From IMG/VR virus record IMGVR_UViG_3300024503_000485, positions 155,445-219,444 of that record: 64,000 nt of DNA. One strand, given 5' to 3'. The stretch's first letter is position 1. Each line of letters opens with the position of its first letter. The position numbers were made by a program, and so were the translations under genes. Below are positions 29,616 to 45,538 of this stretch, in pieces. The notes below the pieces were generated by a model. The model saw only the letters and a list, made by a program, of their open reading frames with translations, did not search any database and had not been told where the DNA came from.

Positions 29616-30626
29616 TCATACTGACAAAACTCTAGTTTCATCATAGTTGTATCTAGCATTTAATGGCTCCGCATAAGATTGTGCCTGCTCTGCAATTTTT
29701 TTCAAATCGTAGAGATGACAAAATTTCATTAATCTAATTCCAACTTGATTAACATTTTTGTTAGCAGTTGTAGCAGTATTAATTGTTTCTACAATAATTT
29801 TTTTAATTTCTTCTGGTTGATAAGACAAATCGATTAGTCGCCGATTTCTCTCATAGTCTTCCAAAACTCTGTGTTCTTTGCCTTCGTGGTCAGTCCATCT
29901 CTGAAGCATGAGATTGTTCCACGCAAATCCTTTGGTTTTACGATCTTCGAACGCTTCAGCAAGACCCACTTTTTTGCTTGTGCCTTTAGTACGCACACCT
30001 GGATACGCTGAGAAGACATTATCACTGGTATCACCACGCATACATTTTTCAAATAGTTGCCATTCTGGATTGGGTGCTGCTTTAGCTTCTTTAGTTTTTT
30101 TGTCAACAATGGGCTTACCTTTGTCATCAAAATACCCCTCATGTGTAATAGTCATTTCCATTACACCGTTATATTGTTTCACATTGGGTGCAATAAGTTG
30201 TGCAAAATCGGTATCTGTAGAAATAATAACATGGTTATCATCTGGATGATTTTGAATCCAGCCTGCAATTAAATCATCTGCTTCTAATTGCGGATGATGC
30301 ATAACGGTGCAATTTGTTTTATCTTTAATGAATTCTTTAAAGGTATCAAATGCTTCCCAAAATAGTGTATCTTCTTCTTGTTCTTTTTCGCTGTGTGCCG
30401 CACGAGCTTCTGCACGATTTCTTTTGTAGGGGGCGTAAAAATCTTTGCGCCAGCTACGACCTTCTAAGCAGAAAATAACGTGACTGCCGTTAAACTGCTG
30501 CCAGGCTTTACGAATTGAATTTAAAGTTATATGAAAAGCCATGCCAAGTTTAATATCAGCATCGCCGTTGATCACATGCCGTGCGCGAAAAAAAGTATTC
30601 GCAGTATCAACTAAAATGTAGGTCAT
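29616..30626 (-). CDS. rnh: 5'-3' exonuclease / flap endonuclease (T4 RNase H-like)
   Basis: ILVDTAN, SWRKDFYAPYKRNR, LEADDLIA, STDTDFAQL, GDTSDNV motifs. Confidence 0.9.
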   Translation of the reverse strand: MTYILVDTANTFFRARHVINGDADIKLGMAFHITLNSIRKAWQQFNGSHVIFCLEGRSWRKDFYAPYKRNRAEARAAHSEKEQEEDTLFWEAFDTFKEFIKDKTNCTVMHHPQLEADDLIAGWIQNHPDDNHVIISTDTDFAQLIAPNVKQYNGVMEMTITHEGYFDDKGKPIVDKKTKEAKAAPNPEWQLFEKCMRGDTSDNVFSAYPGVRTKGTSKKVGLAEAFEDRKTKGFAWNNLMLQRWTDHEGKEHRVLEDYERNRRLIDLSYQPEEIKKIIVETINTATTANKNVNQVGIRLMKFCHLYDLKKIAEQAQSYAEPLNARYNYDETRVLSV

Positions 30627-31060
30627 TTATTATTTCTTTTTACACTCTGTATGTCCAAAGTCCCTGTTTGTAAAGGACCACCGTAATCACCGTCAACAAC
30701 AACATTAGCACATAGTTCACGGAACCAACGATCGACAATTTCTTCGTCCAAATCACCGTCAGCACCATAACCTTCTTGCTTTAATTGTAGCACAAAATGT
30801 TCATTCCAGTCAAGTTCAAAAAAACCGTTACGAACATTGTCTTTGTTTATATGTGTATTTAACACGCCTACCCATGGTTCTTTCTTTCGAGTAGCACGAT
30901 CTTTTGGACTCAATTTAGCCAATTCTTGTTCTTGAGCAATTTCTTTTAGGCTATTTTCGGCTTCTTCTTTTAATTTGTTAGCCTGTTCAAGTGCTAATCT
31001 TGCTTCTTCAATGTTGGCTTCGATTTTATCTAAACCAAATAATTTTTTAATAAATTTCAT
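30623..31060 (-). CDS. Hypothetical protein
   Basis: Start MKFIKK is coupled to the queE stop (TAATG). Confidence 0.65.
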   Translation of the reverse strand: MKFIKKLFGLDKIEANIEEARLALEQANKLKEEAENSLKEIAQEQELAKLSPKDRATRKKEPWVGVLNTHINKDNVRNGFFELDWNEHFVLQLKQEGYGADGDLDEEIVDRWFRELCANVVVDGDYGGPLQTGTLDIQSVKRNNK

Positions 31061-31923
31061 TAAGTTCCCCACTCATTTTTAAATAATGGTACTTGTAGTC
31101 TATCACTATAGCGCAAGCCATTTTTCATCGCTAGTTCAGCGACCCTACGATTATTAAGAGTATAAACAGACTCCACCCCACCAACTGGCATAAGATATAC
31201 GGGTCCTGTAAACCCTTCGGCTCTGTAAATGTCTGCTGTTTCAATTGCTTCTTCTGCATCTTCTTCTGTCGCTACTACAAACTTAAGGTAAGTGTAGCCA
31301 ACCTCCTCATATTCACATACAATGTCTGGACGAATAGCTTCACTGCGTTCTTCACCGGAACAACTTAGTTTAGCACTTACACTAAATGTAATTTCTTTAT
31401 TATATTCTGGATGCGGCATCAACCATTCGATAGAAAGAAATTCTTTAAACTCTGGCGTTAGTTTTTGAGTACCATTAGTTTCAAAGGTAATCTCTTTTAA
31501 ACCAGCCATCTTAGGATGGCGCAACAGATCTGGATAAGCACGTTGCCAACCTAGTAACGGCTCGCCGCCTGTAATGACCAAGTGTTCGTCCTGCCACTGA
31601 TTAAATGGAAGGATTTCGCAGATACGTTCTGCAATACCATCTGTTGTAAGCATAGGACTAAGATCTTTAAAACGAGGATCCCAACTAGCGTAACTATCAC
31701 AGCCTGTGCTAACAAGCGGAAGTTCTTCGTATTTTGTATAAGGTTTTCTTTCGTGCTGGATAGCAATATCTTCAACTTCTGCACTTAGTTCGCCCTTTGG
31801 CATACCAAAGCCTGCACATTTAAAGTTACAACCAAATGTACGTAAGAAAACAGAAGGCACACCCATAAAGCGTCCTTCACCTTGAATGCTATAAAATAGC
31901 TCTGCGATTTTAATTTTGCTCAT
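31060..31923 (-). CDS. queE: 7-carboxy-7-deazaguanine synthase (radical SAM)
   Basis: ELFYSIQGEG..GVPSVFLRTFGCNFKC...GCDS, VITGGEP, FETNGT, SVSAKL, YLMP, RLQV signature. Confidence 0.88.
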   Translation of the reverse strand: MSKIKIAELFYSIQGEGRFMGVPSVFLRTFGCNFKCAGFGMPKGELSAEVEDIAIQHERKPYTKYEELPLVSTGCDSYASWDPRFKDLSPMLTTDGIAERICEILPFNQWQDEHLVITGGEPLLGWQRAYPDLLRHPKMAGLKEITFETNGTQKLTPEFKEFLSIEWLMPHPEYNKEITFSVSAKLSCSGEERSEAIRPDIVCEYEEVGYTYLKFVVATEEDAEEAIETADIYRAEGFTGPVYLMPVGGVESVYTLNNRRVAELAMKNGLRYSDRLQVPLFKNEWGT

Positions 31924-32101
31924 TGTTTATTATACCTTTATATATGAAATTTGTCAAGTCCTCTTTGACCAAACTCCATGTTCCGTCTTTATTATCAATC
32001 CAATTTATAGTATCGCCTTCTTTCCAACCCATCTCATTTAGTAAATCTTGAGGCAATGGTAATATTCCATCTTCGTTAATCGTTAATGTCCAACTTTTCA
32101 A
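31910..32101 (-). CDS. AbrB/MazE-like small DNA-binding protein
   Basis: DGILPLPQDLLNEMGWKEGDTINW pattern; TTG start. Confidence 0.6.
   Translation of the reverse strand: MKSWTLTINEDGILPLPQDLLNEMGWKEGDTINWIDNKDGTWSLVKEDLTNFIYKGIINNEQN
31929..31957 (-). promoter_or_regulatory. Consensus sigma70 promoter TTGACA-N17-TATAAT for queE (probably leaderless mRNA)
   Basis: -35 at 31952-31957, -10 at 31929-31934; only 5 nt separate the -10 from the ATG. Confidence 0.8.
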
Positions 32102-32594
32102 CTTTTACTCCGGATTTTTCAAGAAATTTAATTCCATCATCATTACGATAAGATTCGCGATAGAAAACACTATTAATCCCGCTTTGATAAATGAGTTTGG
32201 CACAATCAAGGCAAGGACTATGAGTAACAAACATAGTAGCATTCGCACCAGACTCAGTACTTTTAGCCAATTTGGCAATTGCATTTGTTTCTGCATGTAA
32301 TACCTCGGGTTTAGTTTTTAATCCAAAATGAACGTTACATCCTGCTTCTTCATTCCATTCTTCGTATGGATATTTAGAAAGAAATTCGTCGGGACTCAGC
32401 CATCCGCCTGCTCCGGTGTCATAATCTCTATATTCGCAGTTATTTTCCCAACCAGCCGGCATACCATTATAGCCAATACTGATAATTCTATCATCTTTGA
32501 CTACAATAGCACCAACATGTAATCTTTGTGCATGACTAAGCTCGGAGAATAATTGAGCGGCCTTCATGTATGCGCTCTTCATTTTTTCTTTCAT
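32076..32594 (-). CDS. dCMP deaminase
   Basis: VGAIVV..SIGYNG, HAETNAI, SPCLDC zinc motifs. Confidence 0.9.
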   Translation of the reverse strand: MKEKMKSAYMKAAQLFSELSHAQRLHVGAIVVKDDRIISIGYNGMPAGWENNCEYRDYDTGAGGWLSPDEFLSKYPYEEWNEEAGCNVHFGLKTKPEVLHAETNAIAKLAKSTESGANATMFVTHSPCLDCAKLIYQSGINSVFYRESYRNDDGIKFLEKSGVKVEKLDIND

Positions 32595-32978: not shown

Positions 32979-33169
32979 TCTGGTAATGGATTAAATCGTT
33001 GAAGAAAACTTTCAATGTAACAACTCCATTCCTGACATTCTGCTATATTAGGATTGCAGTTATCTAATCGATAATACACCCAAGTATGATCATCGATTTC
33101 GGTTACACTAATAACACGAAATTTTTTTCTATCATTATAGGTACCCCAAAGTGTTCCTGCTTTAACCAT
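32975..33169 (-). CDS. Hypothetical protein
   Basis: 64-aa ORF overlapping its neighbours. Confidence 0.6.
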   Translation of the reverse strand: MVKAGTLWGTYNDRKKFRVISVTEIDDHTWVYYRLDNCNPNIAECQEWSCYIESFLQRFNPLPE

Positions 33170-33749
33170 ATTCTTTGTTCCTTAAAAATTGTGACAGCAA
33201 TTCAAAAATAACTTTATTTCCTTTTTCAGTATAATGATTAATTAAACCTCTTTCCGAACTCCAAAGTCTACTAAAATCAAAATGATTTTTTTCTATTGAT
33301 AGTTTTTTTAAAATTTCAATATGAGATAAACTTATATAAGGAATTGTTATTATACTATTAATTTCTTTTCTTAACAACCGATAAACATCTAATTGATACT
33401 CGTCGTCGTAGTGATATTTGAACCATCCTTGAGCAGTTTTTAAATTACCATCAAACAAAGAAAAATTTTCGTTTATGTCGGTTAAAATTAAATCACAATC
33501 TTTATGAAATCCAGTTTTATGAATTGGATGATTTGGAGTATGTATTCTACTAGGACTGGTATGACTAACAATTATACAATCATACAGGTGTTGGTTAATA
33601 GTTTCAATTTGTTTATATATTTTGTATTCGCCTACGCCAGCTTGAGCTACATTTGTAACTTCGTGTTCTTTAGCCAATAAATCAACCCAACCAATAGAGG
33701 CATTTGGCCACTTAGCGGCAAAACTATCACCGGCAATTAAAATTCTCAT
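33162..33749 (-). CDS. SGNH/GDSL-like hydrolase or acyltransferase
   Basis: LIAGDSF, NVAQAGVG, C-terminal NHY. Confidence 0.7.
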   Translation of the reverse strand: MRILIAGDSFAAKWPNASIGWVDLLAKEHEVTNVAQAGVGEYKIYKQIETINQHLYDCIIVSHTSPSRIHTPNHPIHKTGFHKDCDLILTDINENFSLFDGNLKTAQGWFKYHYDDEYQLDVYRLLRKEINSIITIPYISLSHIEILKKLSIEKNHFDFSRLWSSERGLINHYTEKGNKVIFELLSQFLRNKEYG

Positions 33750-34564
33750 AGTGCTTTCAACCAGGGTAGATATTTAGTAGCAATGAGAGTGTGATAATCT
33801 TTATTATAATGTTCGTTGTCTTCGATAAAATATTTTGTATGGTCAATATTTTTATCTAAAAAGAATTTTTCAACGGTCTTAGGTGCTAATGTTGTAGCTT
33901 TTAATTGTCCGTAGTAGTTATAAACATCGGGAAATTTCAATCTTTCTGTAAAATTAAAAAGATATAATTTAGCATTGTTTTCAAAACAAATTCTATCCCA
34001 GGCAAAGATTTGTAAACCAAAATCTCTTTTTTCTAAAAAAGAGTTTAATTCAAAAAATAATTTAACCTGCATATAAGTATTTTTTCTTAGATCAGGTTCT
34101 AATAATCCTTTCTCAGCAGATAAATTCATACCGGGAAATTTTGAATAATCGTCGTATGTGGGTTTATTGAATAATTGAAGTTTGTCTTTAACTACCGTAT
34201 TGTCAACGTATCTAGAAATTAAAGAATTATCACTATCACATTTTAATTTAAAATGATCTACAGGAATAACATCGTCGGATAATTCATTATCAAATCCTAT
34301 TGTAAAACGATTTAAAGGTGCTACACATAGAAATACTTCATCAATGTCGTTATATTCTTCAAACATCGATTTTAACCAGTCTGTATACACACGATTGTTT
34401 ACACCTGCCATTGCATATATAGCCGCAGGTTTGTTTAGTTCGGACGAATAAATTTCTCCGTAATTATTTTCATTCCAGTAAGAAAAACTTCCTGGACCAA
34501 TTTTTCCAGGAATACTATGGTATCCACAAGTATGACTATCTCCAATAAACAACGATCTTGACAT
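33746..34564 (-). CDS. SGNH/GDSL-like hydrolase or acyltransferase
   Basis: FIGDSHT, YAMAGVNN, DNEHY (DxxH); TAATG-coupled start. Confidence 0.7.
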   Translation of the reverse strand: MSRSLFIGDSHTCGYHSIPGKIGPGSFSYWNENNYGEIYSSELNKPAAIYAMAGVNNRVYTDWLKSMFEEYNDIDEVFLCVAPLNRFTIGFDNELSDDVIPVDHFKLKCDSDNSLISRYVDNTVVKDKLQLFNKPTYDDYSKFPGMNLSAEKGLLEPDLRKNTYMQVKLFFELNSFLEKRDFGLQIFAWDRICFENNAKLYLFNFTERLKFPDVYNYYGQLKATTLAPKTVEKFFLDKNIDHTKYFIEDNEHYNKDYHTLIATKYLPWLKAL

Positions 34565-34956
34565 TACCACTTCCTATAATTACCTCGTTCTGGAATAACG
34601 TGTCTAACCCCACCAGTGGGATCTTCCATATCGCCTGTTCGTCTTGGAATTAAATGTACATGAGGCCACGGAACCGTTTGTCCTGCTGATTGGCCATAGT
34701 TAAGACCAATATTAAACCCATCCCATTCTCCGGTGCCTACACGTTTAATTCCATCTTTAACTGCATCTTCAAAACAATCCATTAGCACATCAATAGTATT
34801 GTATTTAGGCACAAAAAGAAGATGGCCATCAGTAACAGGATACTTATCTCTAAATACTCTAACATGATAGTCTTCCTCTACAAGTTCGGTCCACGGTGCT
34901 TTTGAATCTTCAATAAAATCAGGCTCCGACGGAAATACTTTATGTTCGTGTTTCAT
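34564..34956 (-). CDS. HIT family nucleotide hydrolase
   Basis: DKYPVTDGHLL, GFNIGLN.GQSAGQTVPWPHVHLIPR. Confidence 0.9.
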   Translation of the reverse strand: MKHEHKVFPSEPDFIEDSKAPWTELVEEDYHVRVFRDKYPVTDGHLLFVPKYNTIDVLMDCFEDAVKDGIKRVGTGEWDGFNIGLNYGQSAGQTVPWPHVHLIPRRTGDMEDPTGGVRHVIPERGNYRKW

Positions 34957-35540
34957 TTTGACCACCACTCTTCCCAAGGAAAATCAACCCATACATCCTC
35001 TTCTGCTTTGTTAATTTCCATGCCAACAAAATCCATTTTTACATTACACTTACTAGCAAGATTATCAACTAAAACAGCAAATTTAACATTTTCGTTCCAA
35101 ACTTCGTTCCACGAGTCGTCTCCTGGAAAACAACTAGAGCGCCAATCATCCATAATCCAATTAAAGGTAGCGCCACTATCGTTTATATCGTCTACAATTA
35201 AAATATTTTTGTAAGTAGCCCCGTCTTCTAACAAACCACTAGCTACATCTAAAATACTTCCAATGTCGTTAGCATCGTCAATTATACGATCCTTAGTTGG
35301 AGGACCAAGTGCATCTTCTGCCATCCACATATTGCTTTCTCCACCGCTGCCATCTCTTAAACTAACATTTAAAGTCCACATTGGTACATTAAGATAATGA
35401 CTCAACAATACAGCGGGAATAAGGCCACCGCGAGTTAGGCCAACAATATAATCTGGCTTCCAATATCCTGTTGCAATATTTCTTCCAATTTTTGAAACCA
35501 ACCCTGTCATTTCATGCTGGTTGATTATGAGCTTTTTCAT
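34953..35540 (-). CDS. Type I phosphoribosyltransferase (Gpt/Hpt-like)
   Basis: GLTRGGLIPA, ILIVDDINDSGAT PRPP-binding loop, WVDFPWE. Confidence 0.88.
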   Translation of the reverse strand: MKKLIINQHEMTGLVSKIGRNIATGYWKPDYIVGLTRGGLIPAVLLSHYLNVPMWTLNVSLRDGSGGESNMWMAEDALGPPTKDRIIDDANDIGSILDVASGLLEDGATYKNILIVDDINDSGATFNWIMDDWRSSCFPGDDSWNEVWNENVKFAVLVDNLASKCNVKMDFVGMEINKAEEDVWVDFPWEEWWSK

Positions 35541-35958
35541 ATCTCTCCTTTAGATACTCTTCATGTTGTATCCATTTACCGTTAACATCAAAACCCCAAT
35601 CGCGTTGTTTAGGACCAGGCATAAAAATAGTCCAGCACTCAACACCTGGTTCTAATTCAACACGATGAAAGCTATTAGCACTACAAGTTCTAAAATGACC
35701 AGGACCTCTCCAGAATCTTCCTTCTGGAGTAGTTTCCCAGTAACCACCTTTGAGAATTAGTGTAGCATAAGGCCAAGGATGATCGTGTAAATCGTCCGGA
35801 TCACCTTTTAAGAATTTGTGTAAAAAGATATTAAATGGAAAACGATCTCTATCTTTTAGAAAAAGATAGTAACGTTCTAAATATGGTTCGTTTACTTCTC
35901 GATCCATAACGATACGTTTACGACCCATACCTTCTAAAAGATTAAGAAACCATTTCAT
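35512..35958 (-). CDS. Cupin-fold protein
   Basis: HDHPW..LKGGYWE..HRVEL..WTIF; ATGA-coupled start MKWFLN. Confidence 0.7.
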   Translation of the reverse strand: MKWFLNLLEGMGRKRIVMDREVNEPYLERYYLFLKDRDRFPFNIFLHKFLKGDPDDLHDHPWPYATLILKGGYWETTPEGRFWRGPGHFRTCSANSFHRVELEPGVECWTIFMPGPKQRDWGFDVNGKWIQHEEYLKERYEKAHNQPA

Positions 35959-36170
35959 GTGCGATCCTTTAACCATGCGTCTACTTTTGCTTCTGCTTCT
36001 TCTTGTGTAACAGCATAAGCATAGATCCAAAAACAATCATCTTTACCTTTGATATCAAAAGGAACACTACCGTTAAACAGGATTCCTTCTTCTAACATAC
36101 GTTTTACTTCAAATTTCTTTAAATTTCTTGCACGATTAATTAAATCGTTAGCCATGTCTACTGAATTCAT
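35955..36170 (-). CDS. Hypothetical protein
   Basis: 71-aa ORF with ATGA overlaps. Confidence 0.6.
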   Translation of the reverse strand: MNSVDMANDLINRARNLKKFEVKRMLEEGILFNGSVPFDIKGKDDCFWIYAYAVTQEEAEAKVDAWLKDRT

Positions 36171-36913
36171 CTTGGGGCAAACTCCTGTTGTAGTTTAATG
36201 TTATCAAAGAATTCTTTCTTTGTACCAGGATCATCTTTAAACGCACCTTTGAGTACGGTGGTCTGTGTAAGACTAGAATGTGCCATAATACCACGATTCT
36301 CACAGCATCCGTGTACTGCTTGAATATAAACGCCTAGGTCTCTAGCTTCTGTGGCTTTTTCGATCTCCCGAGCAATGTCATTAGCAAGTTCCTCCTGGAG
36401 AGTACCACGTCGGGCACACCACTGGGCGATTCTTGTGTATTTGCTGAGTCCGATGAGCTTTTGGGCAGCAATAATACCAATATAAGCAACGCCAGTAACG
36501 GGTTGGTGATGATGGCTACACATACTGCGAAGCTCGCTACGAACAACCAACATACCTTCGTAACGGTCCTCCGAGTCATTTGGAAACGCTGTTGCTGATG
36601 GTTTTGGGTCATATCTTCCTGCCATTATTTCGTTAAAATACATCTTAGCAAGGCGACGTGCTGTGCCTTTACTATTAGGATCGTTTTCACGATCAATTAG
36701 CAACCGATCAAGCACTAGTTCAAATGCCTCTGTTGCTTCGTCAATTAGTCGTTCTTTATCGCCTTCGTGTAAAAAGTCGCTGATATTATCGCCAGCCCAA
36801 AAGCGTTTGCCCTCACGTTTCATTTTAAAACGAAGATGATCGCCTAAGTATGCTTCTTCGTAACCACCGTTCCCTGCCATTGCGTCCAGGGCTGTTTCTT
36901 TTTTATCTGTCAA
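36167..36913 (-). CDS. folE: GTP cyclohydrolase I
   Basis: TARRLAKMY, SMCSHHHQP, GLSKYTR, LQEEL, HGCCENRG; TTG start with GGAG RBS. Confidence 0.93.
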   Translation of the reverse strand: MTDKKETALDAMAGNGGYEEAYLGDHLRFKMKREGKRFWAGDNISDFLHEGDKERLIDEATEAFELVLDRLLIDRENDPNSKGTARRLAKMYFNEIMAGRYDPKPSATAFPNDSEDRYEGMLVVRSELRSMCSHHHQPVTGVAYIGIIAAQKLIGLSKYTRIAQWCARRGTLQEELANDIAREIEKATEARDLGVYIQAVHGCCENRGIMAHSSLTQTTVLKGAFKDDPGTKKEFFDNIKLQQEFAPR

Positions 36914-36952: not shown

Positions 36953-38014
36953 TTATTTTAACATATCTAATAGGTTATCGCAACTAAAATAGTTTTCTTT
37001 TAGTTTTGTTACTTGTTTATTTAGGCGAGGTAGATAAGATTTATAATTTTCCATATAGTGAATAACTCGATCTACAACAGCACTTCTGTATTTTTTATAG
37101 CTGTCAAATGATTCTGTCCATTCGCTAGGATATTTGAAATCCTCCATTGACATTTCGCTGTAACTTAAACGATCTGGAACCATAGGTATTGCATCAACAA
37201 TTGCACCTTCATACCAACTAATACCTAGTGTTTCTTGCAGGTTAGCACTAAACACAAGTTTAGCTTCTCCTAAGAAATTATGATATTCGTTTTTGGTTAG
37301 TTGGCGTTCTTGACAAACAACAAATTCATACTGCGGTAACTGCTCTTTAAGATCATTAAAAATGTCAACTTGTTTTTCAGGAGCAATACGATGAGGAAAA
37401 AGGATTAGATCTTTTTTAGCCATTCCTTTATATTGCAATAAAGTATCTTCCATATACTCCATTGGCCAACCAGTACGAGTCATTTTATAATAATTTTCTG
37501 GTCCGTACATACCGCCAAACAAATTCTTATTAAACATTTCGATATGAAATTGAGTAGCAAAGTAGTTGTGGTCGAACGCATGAAAGAAACTTTTCTCAGC
37601 GTGTCTAACCCAGGGAGCATCGCCGATGAGTCTGCCTAGAAAGTCTTGAGGATCGTATGACCCAGCATGCCATAAGCCATGTGTGGTTACTGGAATGTTC
37701 AATAACTCACTCATGTACTTTAAATTTATGATACCAGGATGCCAAGCATCAGTAAACAAAAAGTGATCGCCGGGATGAACGGCTCCGTTACAAAATAAAC
37801 GCCCCATCTGCTCAACTTGGCTAGACTTATAGATATTAGTCCCGCCAAAATTAAGAAAGGCGCCAGGAGTAGTGGCACTAGGAATGTCCGTAGGACCAGA
37901 TATAATTTGAACATTGTGACCTGCCTTTCGAAGAAGTGAAGGTAAATGGGTTTTCCACTCGCCTGTATAGCGAGTTTCTACTGCTTCAAGGTCAACGAGG
38001 AAAACCCTTGCCAT
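36953..38014 (-). CDS. GT-B (GT4-like, retaining) glycosyltransferase within the 7-deazaguanine cluster
   Basis: FPHRIAPEK and FSANLQETLGISWYEG (E-x7-E) motifs; start reassigned to MARVFLV. Confidence 0.75.
   Translation of the reverse strand: MARVFLVDLEAVETRYTGEWKTHLPSLLRKAGHNVQIISGPTDIPSATTPGAFLNFGGTNIYKSSQVEQMGRLFCNGAVHPGDHFLFTDAWHPGIINLKYMSELLNIPVTTHGLWHAGSYDPQDFLGRLIGDAPWVRHAEKSFFHAFDHNYFATQFHIEMFNKNLFGGMYGPENYYKMTRTGWPMEYMEDTLLQYKGMAKKDLILFPHRIAPEKQVDIFNDLKEQLPQYEFVVCQERQLTKNEYHNFLGEAKLVFSANLQETLGISWYEGAIVDAIPMVPDRLSYSEMSMEDFKYPSEWTESFDSYKKYRSAVVDRVIHYMENYKSYLPRLNKQVTKLKENYFSCDNLLDMLK
36955..36983 (-). promoter_or_regulatory. Sigma70-type promoter TTGCGA-N17-TAAAAT upstream of folE
   Basis: Correct spacing; lies in the 3' end of the GT gene. 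Confidence 0.5.
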
Positions 38015-38288: not shown

Positions 38289-38678
38289 TTAGTACTTGAT
38301 GAAACTACCATTTTCTCCGTCTTCGGAGACCTCAATCCAAACCTCACGGTCGGGATACTTTTTGCTAATCATGTCATATAAATCATCTGACATCATTTCG
38401 CAACTTTTAAAATCTAAACTCAGTGTAGCATCTGCGTAGAGATTTTGCAACCAACGTTTAAATTGAATAAACTCAATATCGCGGTCATTGTGAGTAACAC
38501 CAATCCATACCTTAAAATGGAAGATATGTCGATGTGGATAGCCTAGGAAACTTACATCATATTCATCACCTGTTGCTAGGTTAGGATCTGTAAGTGCTGC
38601 GGGATATTTGTGCATACCTTCTTTTTGAAAGGTAACCCAAATCATTTTGTTAGGACGAATGTCTTGTTTGATAATCAT
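38289..38678 (-). CDS. QueD-like T-fold protein, DpdL-type (LxxxHRHxF)
   Basis: FLGYPHRHIFHF, DRDIEF, SCEM, VSEDGENG; lacks the canonical QueD CxxxHGH; ATGA-coupled start MIIKQ. Confidence 0.75.
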   Translation of the reverse strand: MIIKQDIRPNKMIWVTFQKEGMHKYPAALTDPNLATGDEYDVSFLGYPHRHIFHFKVWIGVTHNDRDIEFIQFKRWLQNLYADATLSLDFKSCEMMSDDLYDMISKKYPDREVWIEVSEDGENGSFIKY

Positions 38679-38890: not shown

Positions 38891-39267
38891 CTTTGCAAAG
38901 CCTCCATCATAATAATTTTTGCTAAACGATCACCTAAATCTTCTGCTTCTGTAATAACATGCATAGTATTTTGATTACGATCTCTATTACGATCATAACT
39001 ACGAGTTTCTACAACGTATCCACCACTTGCTTTATAAATCTGTAGTCGCATACCTTCGGAAGATAGTTTATCTTCTTCAACATAGATACCACGATCTGCT
39101 TCGATATCGTCTTGATGGTCCATTAACCAGTTGCGAAAACGTTGTTTTAAAGTTAGTTTCATTTCTTTCTTTCTTGCCTTTTTAATTTTATTCAATCCGT
39201 AACCAGGTGTTCTTGCGATTGACTTTTGGCCAATGGCGTAGCCTGCTGATACTTGTCCAGTACTCAT
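38887..39267 (-). CDS. Hypothetical protein
   Basis: 126-aa ORF with ATGA overlaps. Confidence 0.6.
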   Translation of the reverse strand: MSTGQVSAGYAIGQKSIARTPGYGLNKIKKARKKEMKLTLKQRFRNWLMDHQDDIEADRGIYVEEDKLSSEGMRLQIYKASGGYVVETRSYDRNRDRNQNTMHVITEAEDLGDRLAKIIMMEALQR

Positions 39268-39797
39268 TTAATAATTTCATCCTTGCCATATTGATCCCAA
39301 TCTGTGAAGCGATCTCTTCCCAGAAGGTCCTGTAGGTTATGACACCATACCCCAGGATTAGTTGCTGAAAAATCTTTGTCGTCGATTTTAAGAGTGGCGT
39401 TATAACCTAGTTGATTAATATAAGGTAATTTTACACTGATCTGCGGAATAAATCTACGTTTTTCGGTAAGACCGCTTTCAAGCAATCCTTCCGTTTCGCT
39501 GACATCAAAATCAAGAGTACACCAGAAACCGTCTTCGGCGTCTAAGCATACATAGATCATATCTTCCCAAGGACGCCAGGTTTCAACATCATTGACGCCG
39601 TTAGTTTTAAAACTTTGGTTAGCACCAAAATAGATATGTTTGCAGTCGTTATTACGAGCAAGTTCCATAATAACATATGGATCATGAACGCCTACAACAA
39701 AAAGAGTTTTCATTCCAAAGGCAGGAGTCTTTTCAATTTCGACTCCTGTAAAGAAGGTGATGTTGTTTTCAACACCAGTGGAGTAATCACGTTTCAT
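39264..39797 (-). CDS. Hypothetical enzyme-like protein of the deazaguanine cluster
   Basis: 177 aa, globular; GVEIEKTP, HIYFGANQSF, KIDD..NPGVWCH. Confidence 0.65.
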   Translation of the reverse strand: MKRDYSTGVENNITFFTGVEIEKTPAFGMKTLFVVGVHDPYVIMELARNNDCKHIYFGANQSFKTNGVNDVETWRPWEDMIYVCLDAEDGFWCTLDFDVSETEGLLESGLTEKRRFIPQISVKLPYINQLGYNATLKIDDKDFSATNPGVWCHNLQDLLGRDRFTDWDQYGKDEIIK

Positions 39798-40140: not shown

Positions 40141-41691
40141 TTATTCAACTTTAAGATTATCTAATGCTTCGTCTTCTCTATCATCAGTCCAAGAAGTTTC
40201 ATCTTCTGATTCTTCATAGAACAATGTATCTGCAATGTTAGTAACACCGCCACGTAGTCGAGCACCTTCTAAGTTCTGTAAGAAACCAAGTCGTTCAGCT
40301 TCTGCAATCATAGTAAATGCTTCATCTTTAGTTTTAAGAGCAAACAATTCTTCAACAAACTGATTAAAGTACAAAATATTACGAGGTACCCATTCCGAAC
40401 GTTCATCGCTCTTATCGTTGTCTTTTACTTTACGCCAGTGTCTCCAATCTGGTTTGTAACTAGCGTATTCAATATCTGCAAGATTGTTTGCACGTTGAAC
40501 AGCACGAATATGACATTCAACATTATGACCCATCATTAGAGCATAAGCAAAACTATCCCAACTAGTTTTACCTTCCTTGCCAATCTTGTTTAACATTCCT
40601 GGAGCATAGTGGCAGATATCCGCGACCGTAAGTCTCCTACCAAAATCGGACTCGAAAGGAAAAGGTATATCGTGCCGTCCGGCAAGACCCTTATTGTCCG
40701 GGGCTTTATCCATGATAACACTGAATCGCTTATTGGTATGTTGGGCGTTAGTATATACCAATCCGTGAGCTGTTGCGATGAAAGGTGAAGCGCAGTCAAA
40801 GGAAATTGTGAAGTTTTCATTTACGTGTTTTCTAATTTGACGTTGAATGCTTGTTAAGTAACAAGCCCAATCCAGCTGTGCGGTACCCAAGAAGTGCATC
40901 CAATCCTTGCCTTCTAGCATACCATCAAAACGCATAGTGATTAGTCTGCGTAGTGTAATAGGCATTTTGCACATATTAGCACCACCCATAGCCCAACCTT
41001 CTGCGGCTTTGTCTCCATACTTGTTTGTATCGGAATATTCTTTTACACCCTGGTACCACGCTTCTGCGTTTTCCCAGTTGCTACCTTGTAAAACATTTAA
41101 TAGCTTAGTGCCGCCTTCTTTGGCACCTAAACGATTTTGAATAAAGTATTCGTTATTAAAACGAGTCTTTTCTAAACAATCTTCAAACGATTTTAATCCT
41201 GTCTTTGGGCTGTGAATGTGATCACAAGCCCATGTCGGAACGTCTAGCATCATTGACCAATCAGCAGTTACGTCTAACCAAGTTAAAATCTTTTCGCGAG
41301 TTTTATTTGCTTCAGTACCTTCAAAGTTTTGCCAGTCAAACTTAATAACACCTTTACCGATCTGATAACCGCCTGAATCTCCTAAGATCATTGTCTTTGA
41401 ACGATCACGCTGTTGAATCATAGATTCTTGCGTCATAGACTTAGTAATGTCTAATTGAGCATGACCCGCTGAATACAAGGCAAATTTATAATAAAAATAT
41501 CCTTGTTCGGGATTTAAAAAATTCATACCTTCAATACCGCGATCAAAGTCTTTAGGAATGCGGTCATCTGGAATAAATTTTTCTAAACGTTGTTTTGCAA
41601 CGTATGTAGAATAGAAAGAACTAATAGCTGGTAAGTATACCGCATAGTCCTTTTGTAGTGGTGTTAAATCAACTGGTGGTTGTTTCTTCAT
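40141..41691 (-). CDS. dpdA: TGT-fold guanine transglycosylase, DpdA-type (DNA 7-deazaguanine insertion)
   Basis: GDSGGYQ, MLDVP, VLQG, GWAMGG, HFLG, SFDC catalytic/substrate motifs in order; no CxCxxC zinc site of tRNA Tgt; clustered with folE and queE. Confidence 0.8.
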   Translation of the reverse strand: MKKQPPVDLTPLQKDYAVYLPAISSFYSTYVAKQRLEKFIPDDRIPKDFDRGIEGMNFLNPEQGYFYYKFALYSAGHAQLDITKSMTQESMIQQRDRSKTMILGDSGGYQIGKGVIKFDWQNFEGTEANKTREKILTWLDVTADWSMMLDVPTWACDHIHSPKTGLKSFEDCLEKTRFNNEYFIQNRLGAKEGGTKLLNVLQGSNWENAEAWYQGVKEYSDTNKYGDKAAEGWAMGGANMCKMPITLRRLITMRFDGMLEGKDWMHFLGTAQLDWACYLTSIQRQIRKHVNENFTISFDCASPFIATAHGLVYTNAQHTNKRFSVIMDKAPDNKGLAGRHDIPFPFESDFGRRLTVADICHYAPGMLNKIGKEGKTSWDSFAYALMMGHNVECHIRAVQRANNLADIEYASYKPDWRHWRKVKDNDKSDERSEWVPRNILYFNQFVEELFALKTKDEAFTMIAEAERLGFLQNLEGARLRGGVTNIADTLFYEESEDETSWTDDREDEALDNLKVE

Positions 41692-42040
41692 TTTCTCTCG
41701 CTAGTATTGATGTAAGTTCTAATCTTGTCTTTGCCTGTTCTAGTTGGTCTAATGCTATACGGACTGCTTTATTAGTTGTGGCCAACTTGTACCATTCTTC
41801 TTCCTGCTTCATACGTTTAATAGCCCAGTCAATGGCCTTTTCTGCTTCATTATTTAGGCCTACGTTTGCAGATCCTGCATAAATTTTCATCCAAGAATTG
41901 CCATCAAACACTTCCATATCGGAACCGTTTAATCTCAACATGCCTTGTGAAGGATTATTATGATTCATTGACACATAGGGAAGCGAACTTCCCCCTGCGG
42001 CATACATATGTTTGCTGGAACTATTAACGTTATTAATCAT
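41669..42040 (-). CDS. Hypothetical protein
   Basis: 123-aa ORF overlapping its neighbours. Confidence 0.6.
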   Translation of the reverse strand: MINNVNSSSKHMYAAGGSSLPYVSMNHNNPSQGMLRLNGSDMEVFDGNSWMKIYAGSANVGLNNEAEKAIDWAIKRMKQEEEWYKLATTNKAVRIALDQLEQAKTRLELTSILARENEETTTS

Positions 42041-42777
42041 TAGGCCGCCTGTGCTGGAATAATGTATTTGTATGTTGCCAAACCGCTGTCTAGAGTAATC
42101 TGGATAGCACCTTCGTTACTCAAACTCATCTTAGTGTTGTTAACATCGGCAATCTTAAGAATGCTCAAGATTGGTAGCACTGGCCAAGTCCAACCGCGAT
42201 CCAGTTTACCCGCAACGTTTTGTGCAAAAATAAACTCACCGCCGTGTGTGCTTGCATCACCAAAGATAAACTTTAAGTTACCGCCATCTGTCTTTGCTAA
42301 GAATGTTGGGTGTTCGTTGTTAGCACCTGCTTGGAAGTTGAAACGCTGTACTGCGGCAACACTTGGTTCTAGTTCAACATCCCACTTAACACCACGAAAC
42401 TTAACGGTTTTCATCTTTTCGTTAATAATTTCTTGATTCATAAAGCGATAATCATTACGGAAGTCACCGTCTTTATTTTCAAAGTGAATTCCTACCGGAA
42501 TAGTTTCACCATTTCTTTCAGCAGTTGTAATAGTGATTTTAGCATCATCTTTATATTCTGAACCGTCTAATAGGTATTTGAGTTTATTAAGTTGAGGCAT
42601 GCCAAAAACACCAACCATATCTGGGTATGGATTAGAAGTTTCTGCTTCCATAATAACAGAACGATCGTCTGCCATTGAATTAATTGTAGTCTTTTCTTCT
42701 GTACCTGTTACTTTAACGGTAGTTAAAAAACCTAGATTTTGCGTATGTGATACGATGTCTTGTAAAATATCTTTCAT
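42040..42777 (-). CDS. DNA polymerase sliding clamp (gp45-like, putative)
   Basis: 245 aa, alternating beta/alpha pattern, directly downstream of the polymerase; clamp loader present in the window. Confidence 0.55.
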   Translation of the reverse strand: MKDILQDIVSHTQNLGFLTTVKVTGTEEKTTINSMADDRSVIMEAETSNPYPDMVGVFGMPQLNKLKYLLDGSEYKDDAKITITTAERNGETIPVGIHFENKDGDFRNDYRFMNQEIINEKMKTVKFRGVKWDVELEPSVAAVQRFNFQAGANNEHPTFLAKTDGGNLKFIFGDASTHGGEFIFAQNVAGKLDRGWTWPVLPILSILKIADVNNTKMSLSNEGAIQITLDSGLATYKYIIPAQAA

Positions 42778-42839: not shown

Positions 42840-45509
42840 TCATTCAAAATCAAACAATTTGTTAAATGTATTGTCACTTCTAGTTTGACTGATGTCCCAT
42901 TCTAGTACTCCAATTAAGTTTTCTAGTTTTTCATCAATCACGGTAGTTTCCATAGTTGCATCATCGAATGGTAAATCTTTAAACCATTGTGGCAAACGTA
43001 GTTCGTCTACTGGATAAGCTACTGAGGTATATGCCATCGGATTATCTTTGATTTTACAAACAATGACTTTTGCGCCATCAACGATGTTCATTGAGTATTT
43101 GTCGTCAAACATTCTCTTGAGAGTATTCCAATTAAGACTAGCACGAACGTGTCCGGGCATATTAGCCTTACCTTGTTTCTTTTCTTTGGCAGCATATTCT
43201 GTAATGTTGTTGGCTCGCTTAGGTGAACCCTTCTCCCAACCAGGTCGAGTCTTAAACTCTGTTCTAAAATCTGTGATGTATTCTAGAACTTCTTCTTTAC
43301 TATGACCAGTTAAGACCATTTCAAGAACTTTGCTTAGGAAGTCTTGGATAACAACCGGGGTATCTGACCGCTTGAGGTCAAGCCCCATAGCTTTAATCTT
43401 GCCTGGCTTTCCTTCGACATCTGTACGTTTTCCTTCTTTGTCGTAGTAGAGGACGGCATATCGTTTCTTTGTAATGAATAGTCCTTTGGAAGCAACAATC
43501 TCGCGACCTGCTTTGATGACCTCTCCTCGATTTTTTGGGCAGTGGAAGACATCGGACATAAATTTTGCAAAGGTTCCATTTACTTCTTCTCCTATGGTAT
43601 CATAAAGTTCAATTACATTTTCACGAGACCACGGTATGGTCCCTTTCTCAATGTCCTTCTTCAGCGTAGTGTATGCTGAGAAGTAACAAGAGTCTGTGTC
43701 ACCGTAGATAATAGCTTTACCTACATGGTTAAATTCGCCTGTGATAATTTCGTTTACTTTACTTGCCATATGTTTGGCAATTTGTCTACCAGTAAGAGTT
43801 GTGGATTGACCAATTCTGTTATCAAAGAATCTACATCCAGGATTAAGAATAGCACCGTATAATGAGTTTAAGTTAATCTTTTTAACTAATTGACGTTTGT
43901 CCCAGTATTCTTCTTCAATCTTATTACCTGCTTGAATACATTCTTTTAGTTTGGCCTGCATTTCTTTACGTTCTGAATACCATCTCTTAAGCAGTCCTGG
44001 AATAATACCTTCTTTTTCGTAGGTAAAGATAGTTCCATTTGCAGAGATCATCCACGGTTGATTACTTTCAAAAATTAAATCGTAAATTTGTGCTCCGCTA
44101 AGAGTATCACTACCGCCGCCTTCCCAGTCAATGGTAATTTCACGACCTACTTCTTTTTCCATTACAGAAGTATATTCTAAAGAACCAAAAATACCTTCCC
44201 ATGCTGCCGCAAATGATTTGCCTTTAGCCATCTCTGCTTCAATGTATGCTTTAGTTCCATCTGGACGTAGTTGACCAACAATGGTCTCTGGTCCCATGTT
44301 CAAAGCCCTAATAGCAGAAGGATAAAGACTATTAATATCAAGAGAACCAATCCACTCATGTATACCTTTCTTAGGATATGCAACATAAGCACCAGCGGCC
44401 TGTGTGTCTGCTCCAGCTTCTCGTTGTACACGGTTAGGAACAATCATGCCTCGTCTGTGTGCTTCATTAATAATTGCTTGTTCTGTAACAGCAACAGCAC
44501 CCATAGTTGTTTGAATAAGAACCGTATTTTCATGTGCAATGGTGTTAGCAAGATCGATAAATTTTAATTTTTTATCTAACTTATCTAACAATGCACAATC
44601 TTGTCGGTTATACTCAATAAACTTTCGAAAATCGTTATTGTAAAGTTGATCAAGTGTTCCTTCGTAAACGGTCTTAGACTCGCCTACTTCCATTTCCCCG
44701 ATCGCGTCCAGTCTGTATGTATGTCTTTCTTCGTATGTGTACTTTCTGTATAGTTCCAACGAGTCAACGTGAACACGCCCAACCAAGTCATAGGTAACAG
44801 CAGTTTTGCCAAACTTTTCATATTCTCTCTTTTTTGGATATTGATTCCATAAACAGAATCGACGAGTATCTTCTTTGCTTAGGACTTTGATTACACGATT
44901 AACGGTATATGGAATATCAAAACCTTCCGAGTTCCAACCACTTAATACATCTGCTTCTTCAATAAGGGTTAAAAATGTATCTAACATGTCTGCTTCATTT
45001 TCAAAGAGCATAGTGTTAGGAAATTCTGCAACAGCCTTCTCAGCTTCTTCCATATTCATAGTTTTTGGAGGAATAGCCAAACAGACCATAGTTTCCATCC
45101 ATTGTAGATGAACGGCAATGGCAGTAATTGGCATGAATGCATCGTCGGGTGATGCATAGCCACGCTCTGGGTCAAAGTCTACCTCAATATCAAAAAATGC
45201 TACATTTAATTTTGGAGCATCAATATTTAGATAATGATCTTCTAAACAGCGATAGATTGGGTTAATGTCAGATTCGTAAAGTTTTTTGTTTGAATGAATT
45301 GCAAGTTCTTTGCGAAGTTCTTTTACATTCTTGCAACTTACACGACTTAGGGGCTCGCCCTTGATTGATTGAAATTTACCTTTTGGATCAAGGTAATAAA
45401 AAAGGTGTTTGGCGGCATAATCTTTATAGTGCCTTTGACCTTTGTCATCACGTTCAACGACACGAATTGTGTCGTTTTCGCGATCATAGAATGCGTCAAC
45501 GTAGCTCAT
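42840..45509 (-). CDS. Family B DNA polymerase (gp43-like)
   Basis: FDIEVD, GWNSEGFD and YNRQD exonuclease motifs; SLDINSLYPS, KKINLNSLYG, YGDTDS, KKRY; start MSYVDA after AAGGAG. Confidence 0.97.
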   Translation of the reverse strand: MSYVDAFYDRENDTIRVVERDDKGQRHYKDYAAKHLFYYLDPKGKFQSIKGEPLSRVSCKNVKELRKELAIHSNKKLYESDINPIYRCLEDHYLNIDAPKLNVAFFDIEVDFDPERGYASPDDAFMPITAIAVHLQWMETMVCLAIPPKTMNMEEAEKAVAEFPNTMLFENEADMLDTFLTLIEEADVLSGWNSEGFDIPYTVNRVIKVLSKEDTRRFCLWNQYPKKREYEKFGKTAVTYDLVGRVHVDSLELYRKYTYEERHTYRLDAIGEMEVGESKTVYEGTLDQLYNNDFRKFIEYNRQDCALLDKLDKKLKFIDLANTIAHENTVLIQTTMGAVAVTEQAIINEAHRRGMIVPNRVQREAGADTQAAGAYVAYPKKGIHEWIGSLDINSLYPSAIRALNMGPETIVGQLRPDGTKAYIEAEMAKGKSFAAAWEGIFGSLEYTSVMEKEVGREITIDWEGGGSDTLSGAQIYDLIFESNQPWMISANGTIFTYEKEGIIPGLLKRWYSERKEMQAKLKECIQAGNKIEEEYWDKRQLVKKINLNSLYGAILNPGCRFFDNRIGQSTTLTGRQIAKHMASKVNEIITGEFNHVGKAIIYGDTDSCYFSAYTTLKKDIEKGTIPWSRENVIELYDTIGEEVNGTFAKFMSDVFHCPKNRGEVIKAGREIVASKGLFITKKRYAVLYYDKEGKRTDVEGKPGKIKAMGLDLKRSDTPVVIQDFLSKVLEMVLTGHSKEEVLEYITDFRTEFKTRPGWEKGSPKRANNITEYAAKEKKQGKANMPGHVRASLNWNTLKRMFDDKYSMNIVDGAKVIVCKIKDNPMAYTSVAYPVDELRLPQWFKDLPFDDATMETTVIDEKLENLIGVLEWDISQTRSDNTFNKLFDFE

Positions 45510-45518
45510 TTTTTCTCC

Positions 45519-45538
45519 TTGCAATTTTTGGCTTGCAA
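45519..45538 (-). promoter_or_regulatory. Hairpin abutting the polymerase Shine-Dalgarno (possible autogenous operator)
   Basis: TTGCAA-GCCAAAAA-TTGCAA immediately 5' of GGAG. Confidence 0.5.

What the first reader, a model, noticed from the sequence alone, without database searches (positions are those of the whole stretch)
38289..38678. The only T-fold pterin enzyme is the LxxxHRHxF (DpdL-type) variant, not canonical QueD
Seen: LGYPHRHIF replaces the QueD CxxxHGH motif, and no canonical QueD is in the window. From memory, and to be verified, this motif marks DpdL, the QueD paralog proposed to decarboxylate CDG to unsubstituted 7-deazaguanine. Inference: either it doubles as QueD, or the phage uses a host or distal QueD and this protein performs a downstream step.
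Basis: partly seen in the sequence, partly recalled or inferred. Interest (0 to 1): 0.65.

Follow-up and report, generated by a model that had tools for sequence, protein, structure and literature searches.

The report
Phage DpdL, a QueD-derived paralog
This small phage gene is a new member of the already described DpdL family, a QueD-like enzyme proposed but not proven to make plain 7-deazaguanine for phage DNA, and the "missing" ordinary QueD gene lies about 30 kb past the end of the sequenced fragment.

Summary
Window 38289-38678 (-) encodes a 129-aa protein carrying LGYPHRHIF. No canonical QueD (PF01242) is found in the window or in the whole 219-kb contig.

The DpdL assignment is supported:
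- It is homologous to the founding DpdL of Cellulophaga phage phiST (33% identity) and to ACP17 DpdL (55%).
- It has the published LxxxHRHxF signature.
- It folds as a beta-beta-alpha-alpha-beta-beta T-fold whose nearest solved structures are E. coli QueD and PTPS.
- In a tree it separates from phage QueDs with 100/99 support.

The idea that it doubles as QueD is not supported. All nine complete DpdL phages examined also encode a PF01242 QueD and none encodes a QueC above the Pfam cut-off. The contig is a fragment (62% complete) that ends 25 kb upstream of dpdL. A metagenome contig 100% identical to the last 11.5 kb of the window, joined by a 99.97% overlap to a further contig, reaches a 183-aa QueD with CRHLHGH about 30.5 kb past the window end.

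The title is inexact, because FolE (36167-36913) is by textbook knowledge also a T-fold pterin enzyme.

dpdL sits in a cluster with a DpdA-like transglycosylase, a GT4-like glycosyltransferase, FolE, a purine-PRTase-like gene and QueE. CDG decarboxylation remains an untested proposal. Verdict: a new member of a known kind, of modest interest.

The parts
38289..38678 (-). dpdL: a 129-aa QueD-derived T-fold protein and proposed 7-carboxy-7-deazaguanine decarboxylase
   Evidence: ORF found. It matches phrog_17812 (unknown function, E = 2e-31) but gives no Pfam or NCBIfam QueD hit. tblastn finds phiST CGPG_00067, ACP17, Phosso and PA5oct. The AF2 model has pLDDT 89.9. Foldseek's top hits are E. 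coli QueD 4ntk/3qn9, TM 0.64-0.70. It falls in the DpdL clade with 100/99 support.
38520..38546 (-). Codons for LGYPHRHIF (residues 45-53), the DpdL signature that replaces the QueD CxxxHGH motif
   Evidence: Read directly from the sequence. L45, H49, H51 and F53 are invariant in alignment A1. In the model, H49 and H51 open strand beta2 and H23 closes strand beta1.
40141..41691 (-). DpdA-like DNA/tRNA-guanine transglycosylase homolog, 516 aa, with a DSGG motif at residues 105-108
   Evidence: It is 42% identical to PA5oct QCG76197. It links weakly to ACP17 ASD50403, to the X1 protein annotated 'queuine tRNA-ribosyltransferase' and to BUCT-ZZ01. A profile of the family hits PDB TGT chains at the DSGGFQ motif, but only at E = 0.3-0.9. 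ESM Atlas neighbours include PF01702 TGT clusters at score 0.94. There is no direct Pfam hit.
39264..39797 (-). Conserved 177-aa protein of unknown function lying between dpdA and dpdL
   Evidence: It is a homolog of ACP17 ASD50402, which lies next to that phage's dpdA (30% identity, E = 1e-9 to 1e-13). No Pfam or PHROG hit.
36953..38014 (-). GT4-like (GT-B fold) glycosyltransferase homolog, 353 aa
   Evidence: It is a homolog of ACP17 ASD50404, PA5oct QCG76198 and the Phosso protein annotated 'glycosyltransferase'. hhalign gives 99.96% probability against the X1, BCSR5 and BUCT-ZZ01 neighbours of dpdL. The AF2 model has pLDDT 79. Foldseek's top hits are BshA, MshA and glycogen synthase, all at probability 1.0.
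36167..36913 (-). FolE, GTP cyclohydrolase I: the first step of the pathway, and by textbook knowledge itself a T-fold enzyme
   Evidence: PF01227 E = 1e-38. NCBIfam FolE E = 1e-37, below the curated cut-off.
34953..35540 (-). Purine phosphoribosyltransferase-like protein, 195 aa
   Evidence: PF00156 E = 1.5e-10. Weak NCBIfam matches to xanthine and hypoxanthine-guanine PRTases. A PRTase also sits in the dpdL clusters of PA5oct and BUCT-ZZ01.
31060..31923 (-). QueE-like radical SAM enzyme (CDG synthase), 287 aa
   Evidence: phrog_2076 'QueE-like' E = 1e-52. It matches several NCBIfam QueE models at E = 1e-10 to 1e-12, all below their cut-offs.

Best explanation
The ORF is an ortholog of DpdL, a diverged paralog of QueD (6-carboxytetrahydropterin synthase).

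What it keeps and what it has lost. It keeps the T-fold, the three histidines placed where PTPS/QueD bind zinc (H23, H49, H51) and the C-terminal glutamates (E94, E119). It has lost the catalytic cysteine, which is replaced by L45.

Where it acts. It does not replace QueD. The phage has an ordinary QueD about 56 kb upstream of dpdL, beyond the end of this contig fragment.

Inferred pathway:
1. FolE converts GTP to H2NTP.
2. The distal QueD makes CPH4.
3. QueE makes 7-carboxy-7-deazaguanine (CDG).
4. With no QueC to carry CDG on to preQ0, DpdL acts on CDG. The likeliest reaction is a metal-assisted non-oxidative decarboxylation to 7-deazaguanine.
5. The neighbouring DpdA-like transglycosylase exchanges that base for guanine in phage DNA, protecting it from restriction.

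Shown here: family membership, fold, gene context, and the location of QueD. Inferred: the substrate, the decarboxylation chemistry and the final DNA base.
For: - Homology to the founding DpdLs: phiST CGPG_00067 at E = 7e-8 and ACP17 at E = 5e-36.
- The published definition of the motif and of the proposed function.
- Family-invariant residues G21, H23, P26, A28, L45, H49, H51, F53, H63, R66, E69, F70, S92, C93, E94 and E119.
- An AF2 T-fold model at pLDDT 89.9, with E. coli QueD as the top PDB neighbour and the remaining strong hits QueD or PTPS chains.
- DpdL and QueD split at 100/99 support in the tree, and cross-HMM scores are 7 bits or less.
- 9 of 9 complete DpdL phages carry a PF01242 QueD, and 0 of 9 carry a QueC above the cut-off.
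- The contig has no QueC.
- The window is collinear with contig G001, whose QueD lies 26 kb past the point corresponding to the window end.
- Contig Ga0255154_1000061 is 100.00% identical to window 52482-64000. It overlaps L119 at 99.97% over 10.6 kb, and L119 carries a 183-aa PF01242 protein with CRHLHGH.
- FolE, QueE and a DpdA-like gene flank dpdL.
- phiST, which has DpdL, has all of its G replaced by dDG.
- PA5oct, whose DpdL is 56% identical, resists restriction enzymes whose sites contain G.
Against: - No enzymatic activity has ever been shown for any DpdL. The authors found no dDG when dpdL and dpdA from phiST or ACP17 were expressed in E. coli.
- In this clade dpdL always travels with a GT4-like glycosyltransferase, and often with a PRTase, both absent from phiST. 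The end product here may therefore not be plain dDG.
- PA5oct and Ahp1 have HFH rather than HRH, so the Arg is not essential to the family.
- The QueD link rests on overlapping metagenome contigs from other samples, not on one molecule. Two PTPS types (CxxxHGH and CxxxHGY) occupy that site in strains that are at least 99.9% identical in the overlap.
- Sequence-only links to QueD are weak here: hhalign 40-46% probability over the C-terminal half, and PDB profile E = 0.55.
Confidence: 0.6

Rival explanations
1. DpdL doubles as the phage's QueD, making CPH4 from H2NTP, so that no other QueD is needed.
For: It has the QueD-like fold and the three histidines. No PF01242 gene is present in the window or the contig.
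Against: - The catalytic Cys is replaced by Leu in every member, and QueD is reported inactive without that Cys.
- Every complete DpdL phage also carries a canonical PTPS/QueD.
- The same strain's neighbouring DNA carries one about 30.5 kb past the window end.
- The contig is only 62% complete.
Confidence: 0.03
2. DpdL catalyses a step other than simple CDG decarboxylation. It would work with the co-inherited GT4-like glycosyltransferase and DSGG-type DpdA (and in some phages a PRTase) to build a more elaborate 7-deazaguanine derivative, or it would act on dCDG already in DNA or on a nucleotide.
For: - The GT4-like gene and this DpdA subtype co-occur in exactly the same 7 of 10 DpdL genomes, and both are missing from phiST, the only phage with dDG confirmed by mass spectrometry.
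- The GT-B fold is confirmed.
- A PRTase recurs in three of the clusters.
- Heterologous dpdL plus dpdA gave no dDG, and the authors suggest other enzymes may be required.
- PA5oct is hit by nucleases that sense hypermodified DNA.
Against: - DpdL is conserved across both contexts, with the same invariant residues, which argues for one shared reaction.
- No glycosylated deazaguanine is reported in the one study of natural phage deazaguanines read here.
- Plain 7-deazaguanine offers no obvious sugar acceptor (inference).
- The GT could serve an unrelated purpose.
Confidence: 0.25
3. DpdL is a non-catalytic T-fold protein, for example a carrier that binds CDG or 7-deazaguanine and hands it to DpdA, or a regulator of the pathway.
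For: The catalytic Cys is lost. No activity was detected heterologously.
Against: The putative metal-binding histidines are strictly conserved, together with a new invariant polar set: H63, R66, E69, S92-C93-E94 and E119. That pattern is typical of an active site. In addition, a decarboxylase is chemically required in phiST to get from CDG to dDG, and no other candidate was found.
Confidence: 0.08

Closest known systems
DpdL (Cellulophaga phage phiST CGPG_00067 and Acidovorax phage ACP17 ASD50405; Cui, Hutinet et al., NAR 2023, PMC10516641)
   Same: It has the same family signature L-x3-H-(R)-H-x-F, the same invariant His, Glu and Cys positions, the same size (115-130 aa) and a QueD-like T-fold. 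The context is also the same: FolE, QueE, a DpdA and a separate QueD, with no QueC.
   Different: It is only 33% identical to the phiST protein. It belongs to a PA5oct/Phosso-like jumbo-phage lineage that is very abundant in metagenomes. It is paired with a DSGG-type DpdA and a GT4-like protein rather than the DpdA3 of phiST. Its QueD lies about 56 kb away instead of adjacent.
QueD, 6-carboxy-5,6,7,8-tetrahydropterin synthase (E. coli QueD 4NTK/3QN9; Pfam PF01242 PTPS)
   Same: It shares the T-fold topology, and QueD is its best structural match (TM 0.64-0.70). Histidines sit at the end of beta1 and the start of beta2. The C-terminal '...E...' helix start and the '...E(T/D)...' strand align by hhalign.
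   Different: It gives no PF01242 or TIGR03367 hit. The catalytic Cys is replaced by Leu, HGH by HRH, and the loop between helix 1 and helix 2 is shorter. It forms a separate clade at 100/99 support, and it coexists with a true QueD in every genome examined.
Tubercidin and toyocamycin deazapurine pathways of Streptomyces (from memory, not tested here)
   Same: They also start from FolE, a QueD homolog and a QueE homolog to reach CDG. They use a phosphoribosyltransferase on the deazapurine base, and tubercidin biosynthesis needs a decarboxylation of the 7-carboxyl group.
   Different: As I recall, the decarboxylase there is UbiD-like and acts on a nucleotide, not a T-fold protein. The products are free nucleoside antibiotics, not DNA bases.

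Membership tests
DpdL | Sequence homology to the founding members (phiST CGPG_00067, ACP17 DpdL) | tested here: met
   tblastn gives phiST 33% identity over 92% of the query, E = 7e-8, and the match falls exactly on CGPG_00067. ACP17 gives 55%, E = 5e-36. The family HMM scores 208 bits on this ORF and on nothing else in the contig.
DpdL | Signature LxxxHRHxF in place of the QueD CxxxHGH motif | tested here: met
   LGYPHRHIF at residues 45-53. L, H, H and F are invariant in 10 phage sequences. 239 of 240 metagenome homologs carry the motif.
DpdL | QueD-like T-fold | tested here: met
   AF2 pLDDT 89.9 with beta-beta-alpha-alpha-beta-beta topology. The strong Foldseek PDB hits are QueD or PTPS chains at probability 1.0.
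DpdL | Genome context: FolE, QueD, QueE and a DpdA present, QueC absent | tested here: met
   FolE, QueE and a DpdA-like gene lie within 8 kb. No QueC is found in the 219-kb contig or in 5 related contigs. QueD is not on the contig, but lies about 30.5 kb past its end on overlapping contigs of the same strain. Caveat: the genome is incomplete.
DpdL | Decarboxylation of CDG to 7-deazaguanine, and dDG in virion DNA | not testable with these tools
   This needs biochemistry or LC-MS. It is not yet shown for any family member.
QueD / PTPS (PF01242) | Match to the family HMMs (PF01242, TIGR03367) | tested here: not met
   No Pfam family at E<=1. No QueD model among NCBIfam hits. No PF01242 match in the contig. 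A phage-QueD HMM scores 7 bits or less on DpdL sequences.
QueD / PTPS (PF01242) | CxxxHGH with the catalytic cysteine | tested here: not met
   Leu45 occupies the position four residues before the first His. By contrast, the strain's distal PTPS has CRHLHGH.
QueD / PTPS (PF01242) | Three zinc-binding histidines on strands beta1 and beta2 | tested here: inconclusive
   H23, H49 and H51 are invariant and lie at the end of beta1 and the start of beta2 in the model. No residue-level superposition or metal prediction was available.

The most novel reading that the evidence does not exclude
In this very abundant PA5oct/Phosso-like jumbo-phage lineage, DpdL may be one part of a conserved four-gene module: a DSGG-type DpdA, a 177-aa protein, DpdL and a GT4-like glycosyltransferase, often joined by a purine PRTase. 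That module could make a guanine replacement more elaborate than plain 7-deazaguanine, for example a glycosylated or otherwise extended deazapurine. DpdL's true reaction there might differ from the proposed decarboxylation.
Probability: 0.2. Interest if true: 0.75.

Novelty: new member of a known kind. Interest (0 to 1): 0.3.

Why it matters
The result settles a small annotation question. A dpdL gene without a nearby queD does not mean DpdL substitutes for QueD. In large phages queD is often tens to hundreds of kb away, and fragmentary contigs can simply miss it.

It also shows that the still-uncharacterised DpdL family is very common in environmental phages, with more than 8000 clusters at 90% identity.

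Finally, it identifies a culturable and genetically tractable relative, Pseudomonas phage PA5oct, in which the same gene module could be used to test the proposed CDG decarboxylase and the role of the co-inherited glycosyltransferase.

Tried and rejected
- Megablast of the 5-kb neighbourhood against GenBank phages gave no match.
- A single-sequence PDB search found nothing meaningful.
- A DpdL profile against PDB gave only a marginal hit to P. horikoshii PTPS 2dj6, E = 0.55.
- hhalign of shallow DpdL and phage-QueD profiles reached only 40-46% probability over the C-terminal half, and global mode mis-aligned the N-terminus. I therefore relied on structure for the fold assignment.
- The search for related loci with phiST or Ahp1 DpdL as single queries found nothing in IMG/VR.
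- The supplementary tables of the NAR paper are not held, so the authors' own list of DpdL phages could not be checked.
The word search and the literature had already identified the family.
- A 197-aa 'QueC (faint)' gene found past the window end was examined and rejected as a true QueC. Only its last 50 residues match, and NCBIfam QueC scores 22.6 bits against a cut-off of 150. It is absent from related contigs.
- I could not show that one single contig holds both the window's genes and QueD. The look-up of the QueD protein listed other contigs. The link therefore rests on a 100% overlap and a 99.97% overlap.

Full report
**1. The observation**

The minus-strand ORF at 38289-38678 encodes 129 aa. 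Its ATG overlaps the TGA of the upstream 71-aa ORF in an ATGA at 38675-38678, a common arrangement for co-translated phage genes. Residues 45-53 read LGYPHRHIF, encoded at 38520-38546.

Pfam gives no family at E<=1. NCBIfam gives nothing relevant. PHROGs places it in phrog_17812, function unknown (E = 2e-31).

The window is the last 64 kb of a 219,444-bp IMG/VR contig that CheckV rates 62% complete. PF01242 (PTPS/QueD), PF06508 (QueC) and PF01702 (TGT) all find nothing in the whole contig. tblastn with 12 phage QueDs gives only short chance-level matches (best E = 0.035), and an unfiltered hmmsearch with a phage-QueD HMM gives nothing better than E = 0.5.

So the statement "LGYPHRHIF is present and no canonical QueD is in the window" is correct. 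The title's "only T-fold pterin enzyme" is not. FolE (36167-36913, PF01227 E = 1e-38) is by textbook knowledge also a T-fold enzyme acting on a pterin precursor.

**2. What the protein is**

tblastn against GenBank phages finds 28 records. The best are Sinorhizobium jumbo phage Phosso (72%), Rhizobium phage RHph_I1_18 (58%), Acidovorax phage ACP17 (55%) and the PA5oct group of Pseudomonas jumbo phages (56%). More distant hits are Cellulophaga phage phiST and its relatives (33%, E = 7e-8).

The phiST match falls exactly on CGPG_00067. The NAR 2023 paper (PMC10516641) names CGPG_00067 as DpdL, describes it as a QueD paralog in which CxxxHGH has become LxxxHRHxF, and proposes it as the CDG decarboxylase that yields 7-deazaguanine. 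The authors also tested the ACP17 gene.

An alignment of ten phage DpdLs has these invariant residues: G21, H23, P26, A28, L45, H49, H51, F53, I59, V61, H63, R66, E69, F70, S92, C93, E94 and E119. PA5oct and Ahp1 carry HFH rather than HRH.

The family is very large in metagenomes. Both word searches hit the 8000-candidate ceiling. 239 of the 240 retrieved proteins carry LxxxHRHxF.

**3. Fold and relation to QueD**

Sequence methods barely connect DpdL to QueD with the shallow profiles available:
- A profile search of PDB gives only P. horikoshii PTPS at E = 0.55, although it does align HGH with HRH.
- hhalign against 12 phage QueDs gives 40-46% probability over the C-terminal half.

An AlphaFold2 model built on 32 homologs is confident (pLDDT 89.9). 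It has the beta-beta-alpha-alpha-beta-beta order of a T-fold. H23 sits at the end of strand 1, H49 and H51 open strand 2, C93-E94 open helix 2, and E119 closes strand 3.

Foldseek against the PDB returns E. coli QueD (4ntk, 3qn9, 4ntm) first, at TM 0.64-0.70 and probability 1.0. PTPS from Pyrococcus, Pseudomonas and human follow, and other T-fold enzymes rank lower.

A maximum-likelihood tree of 22 DpdLs and 12 phage QueDs splits the two groups on one long branch with 100/99 support, with the window protein on the DpdL side. Long branches mean the internal order is unreliable.

That is not what is seen.

**4. Where QueD is**

All nine complete DpdL phages examined carry a PF01242 gene above the Pfam cut-off. 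These are ACP17, Phosso, RHph_I1_18, PA5oct, Ahp1, phiST, X1, BCSR5 and BUCT-ZZ01. The distance from dpdL ranges from about 0.1 kb (BCSR5) to 55 kb (PA5oct), 98 kb (X1) and 222 kb (Phosso). None has a QueC above the cut-off.

Five long IMG/VR contigs of the window's own lineage have DpdLs 85-93% identical to it. Four of them carry a PTPS 48-56 kb upstream of dpdL. In the fifth, the contig ends before that point.

The window is collinear with one of these contigs, G001. Window 28.5-64.0 kb maps onto G001 136.2-97.4 kb, and the G001 PTPS at 70.8 kb lies 26 kb beyond the point that corresponds to the window end.

I then walked outward by exact-protein look-ups:
- Contig Ga0255154_1000061 is 100.00% identical to window 52482-64000 and runs 25.9 kb further.
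- Its far end overlaps contig k141_472523 (locus L119) at 99.97% over 10.6 kb.
- L119 carries a 183-aa PF01242 protein with the canonical CRHLHGH motif, 4.4-5.0 kb further on.

This puts QueD about 30.3-30.9 kb past the window end, roughly 56 kb upstream of dpdL. The intervening DNA holds clamp-loader genes, large tail-fibre or baseplate genes, a B12-binding radical SAM gene, a TauD-like gene and UvdE.

A strain variant (L120) that is 99.97% identical in the overlap has a different PTPS with CASVHGY at the same site. I cannot say which type this exact strain carries.

Conclusion: the missing QueD is an effect of contig truncation, not of biology. Many contigs of this phage break at the same place as the window (L108 and L109).

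**5. Surroundings**

All of the following genes lie on the minus strand, listed from high to low coordinates.

| Coordinates | Gene or product | Evidence |
|---|---|---|
| 42840-45524 | DNA polymerase | |
| 42040-42777 | Sliding-clamp homolog | |
| 40141-41691 | 516-aa DpdA-like protein | see below |
| 39264-39797 | Conserved 177-aa protein, also next to dpdA in ACP17 | |
| 38289-38678 | dpdL | sections 1-3 |
| 36953-38014 | 353-aa GT4-like protein | see below |
| 36167-36913 | FolE | |
| 35512-36036 | phrog_4786 protein | |
| 34953-35540 | Purine-PRTase-like protein | |
| 34564-34977 | HIT-family protein | |
| 32076-32594 | dCMP deaminase | |
| 31060-31923 | QueE | |
| 29616-30626 | RNase H | |

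The 516-aa protein is most likely the DpdA transglycosylase, although no Pfam model hits it directly:
- It has a DSGG motif.
- It is 42% identical to PA5oct QCG76197.
- It links weakly to ACP17 ASD50403 and to the X1 protein annotated 'queuine tRNA-ribosyltransferase'.
- A family profile hits PDB TGT chains at the catalytic DSGGFQ motif, though only at E = 0.3-0.9.
- ESM Atlas neighbours include PF01702 clusters at score 0.94.

For the 353-aa protein, the model (pLDDT 79) matches GT-B/GT4 glycosyltransferases such as BshA, MshA and glycogen synthase.

**6. Mechanism**

Shown:
- A QueC-less 7-deazaguanine gene set (FolE, QueD, QueE) with a DpdA-like gene and DpdL.
- DpdL retains the putative metal-binding histidines and the T-fold.
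- DpdL lacks the QueD catalytic Cys.

Inferred, following the NAR 2023 proposal:
- CDG made by QueE is decarboxylated by DpdL on a bound metal to give 7-deazaguanine.
- DpdA then swaps that base into DNA.

Support from relatives. In phiST, dG is completely replaced by dDG. PA5oct DNA resists restriction enzymes with G in their sites (PMC12191111).

Against. No DpdL activity has been demonstrated, and heterologous dpdL plus dpdA gave no dDG.

I put membership in DpdL at about 0.95. I put the decarboxylase function at about 0.5-0.6.

**7. A lead beyond the finding**

The GT4-like protein is homologous to dpdL neighbours in X1, BCSR5 and BUCT-ZZ01 (hhalign 99.96%). Among ten DpdL genomes it co-occurs exactly with the DSGG-type DpdA. 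Both are present in the window, Phosso, PA5oct, ACP17, X1, BCSR5 and BUCT-ZZ01. Both are undetected in phiST, RHph_I1_18 and Ahp1.

phiST is the only DpdL phage whose DNA has been analysed, so the end product in the GT-bearing group is unknown.

A purine-PRTase-like gene recurs in three of these clusters. It might recycle the guanine released by base exchange back to GMP and GTP, or it might make a deazapurine nucleotide. Both ideas are my inference and are untested.

**8. Verdict**

This is a correctly spotted DpdL ortholog. It is a new member of a known but biochemically unproven family. Interest is modest. The open questions are what DpdL really does, and what the co-inherited glycosyltransferase adds.

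No read laying, sequencing-run or complex-prediction jobs were needed.

Noticed in passing
window 36953-38014 (-) and 40141-41691 (-): A GT4-like glycosyltransferase and a DSGG-type DpdA-like protein co-occur in exactly the same 7 of 10 DpdL genomes examined. Both are missing from phiST, the only DpdL phage whose DNA was shown to carry dDG. The final base in this clade may therefore differ from plain dDG.
   Followed up: partly
window 34953-35540 (-): A purine phosphoribosyltransferase-like gene sits in the cluster. Similar genes lie in the dpdL clusters of PA5oct (QCG76202) and Synechococcus phage BUCT-ZZ01 (annotated XGPRT). It may salvage excised guanine or make a deazapurine nucleotide.
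   Followed up: partly
L103:18563-19153 (about 7.0-7.6 kb past the window end): A 197-aa PP-loop protein matches only the last ~50 residues of QueC (Pfam 28 bits; NCBIfam QueC 22.6 bits against a cut-off of 150). It lies on the opposite strand among tail-fibre genes, is absent from related contigs, and is probably an accessory gene rather than a pathway QueC.
   Followed up: partly
L119:14997-15548 versus L120:15153-15737: Strains that are at least 99.9% identical in flanking DNA carry two different PTPS types at the same locus. One is a 183-aa CxxxHGH form and the other a 194-aa CxxxHGY form. PA5oct carries one of each type.
   Followed up: partly
window 64000 (contig end): Several independent metagenome contigs of this phage (L108, L109) end within about 100 bases of the window end, inside the clamp-loader gene. 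Others show an insertion just beyond it, a beta-lactamase/peptidase S11-like gene in L104 and L107. This suggests a strain-variable spot that breaks assemblies.
   Followed up: no
L119:10257-12913: Between the tail genes and QueD lie a 536-aa B12-binding radical SAM gene, a TauD-family dioxygenase and a UvdE endonuclease. Their relation to the modification pathway is unknown.
   Followed up: no
window 33162-34570 (-) and 35512-36036 (-): Two adjacent proteins begin with GDS(F/H) motifs typical of SGNH hydrolases, though neither gave a Pfam hit. A phrog_4786 protein (labelled 'cysteine dioxygenase', also no Pfam hit) lies between QueE and FolE. Their functions were not examined.
   Followed up: no
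window 38289-38678 (-): The DpdL family has an invariant Ser-Cys-Glu at the start of helix 2 (C93 here). The cysteine lost from the QueD motif may therefore have a functional counterpart elsewhere in the pocket.
   Followed up: no
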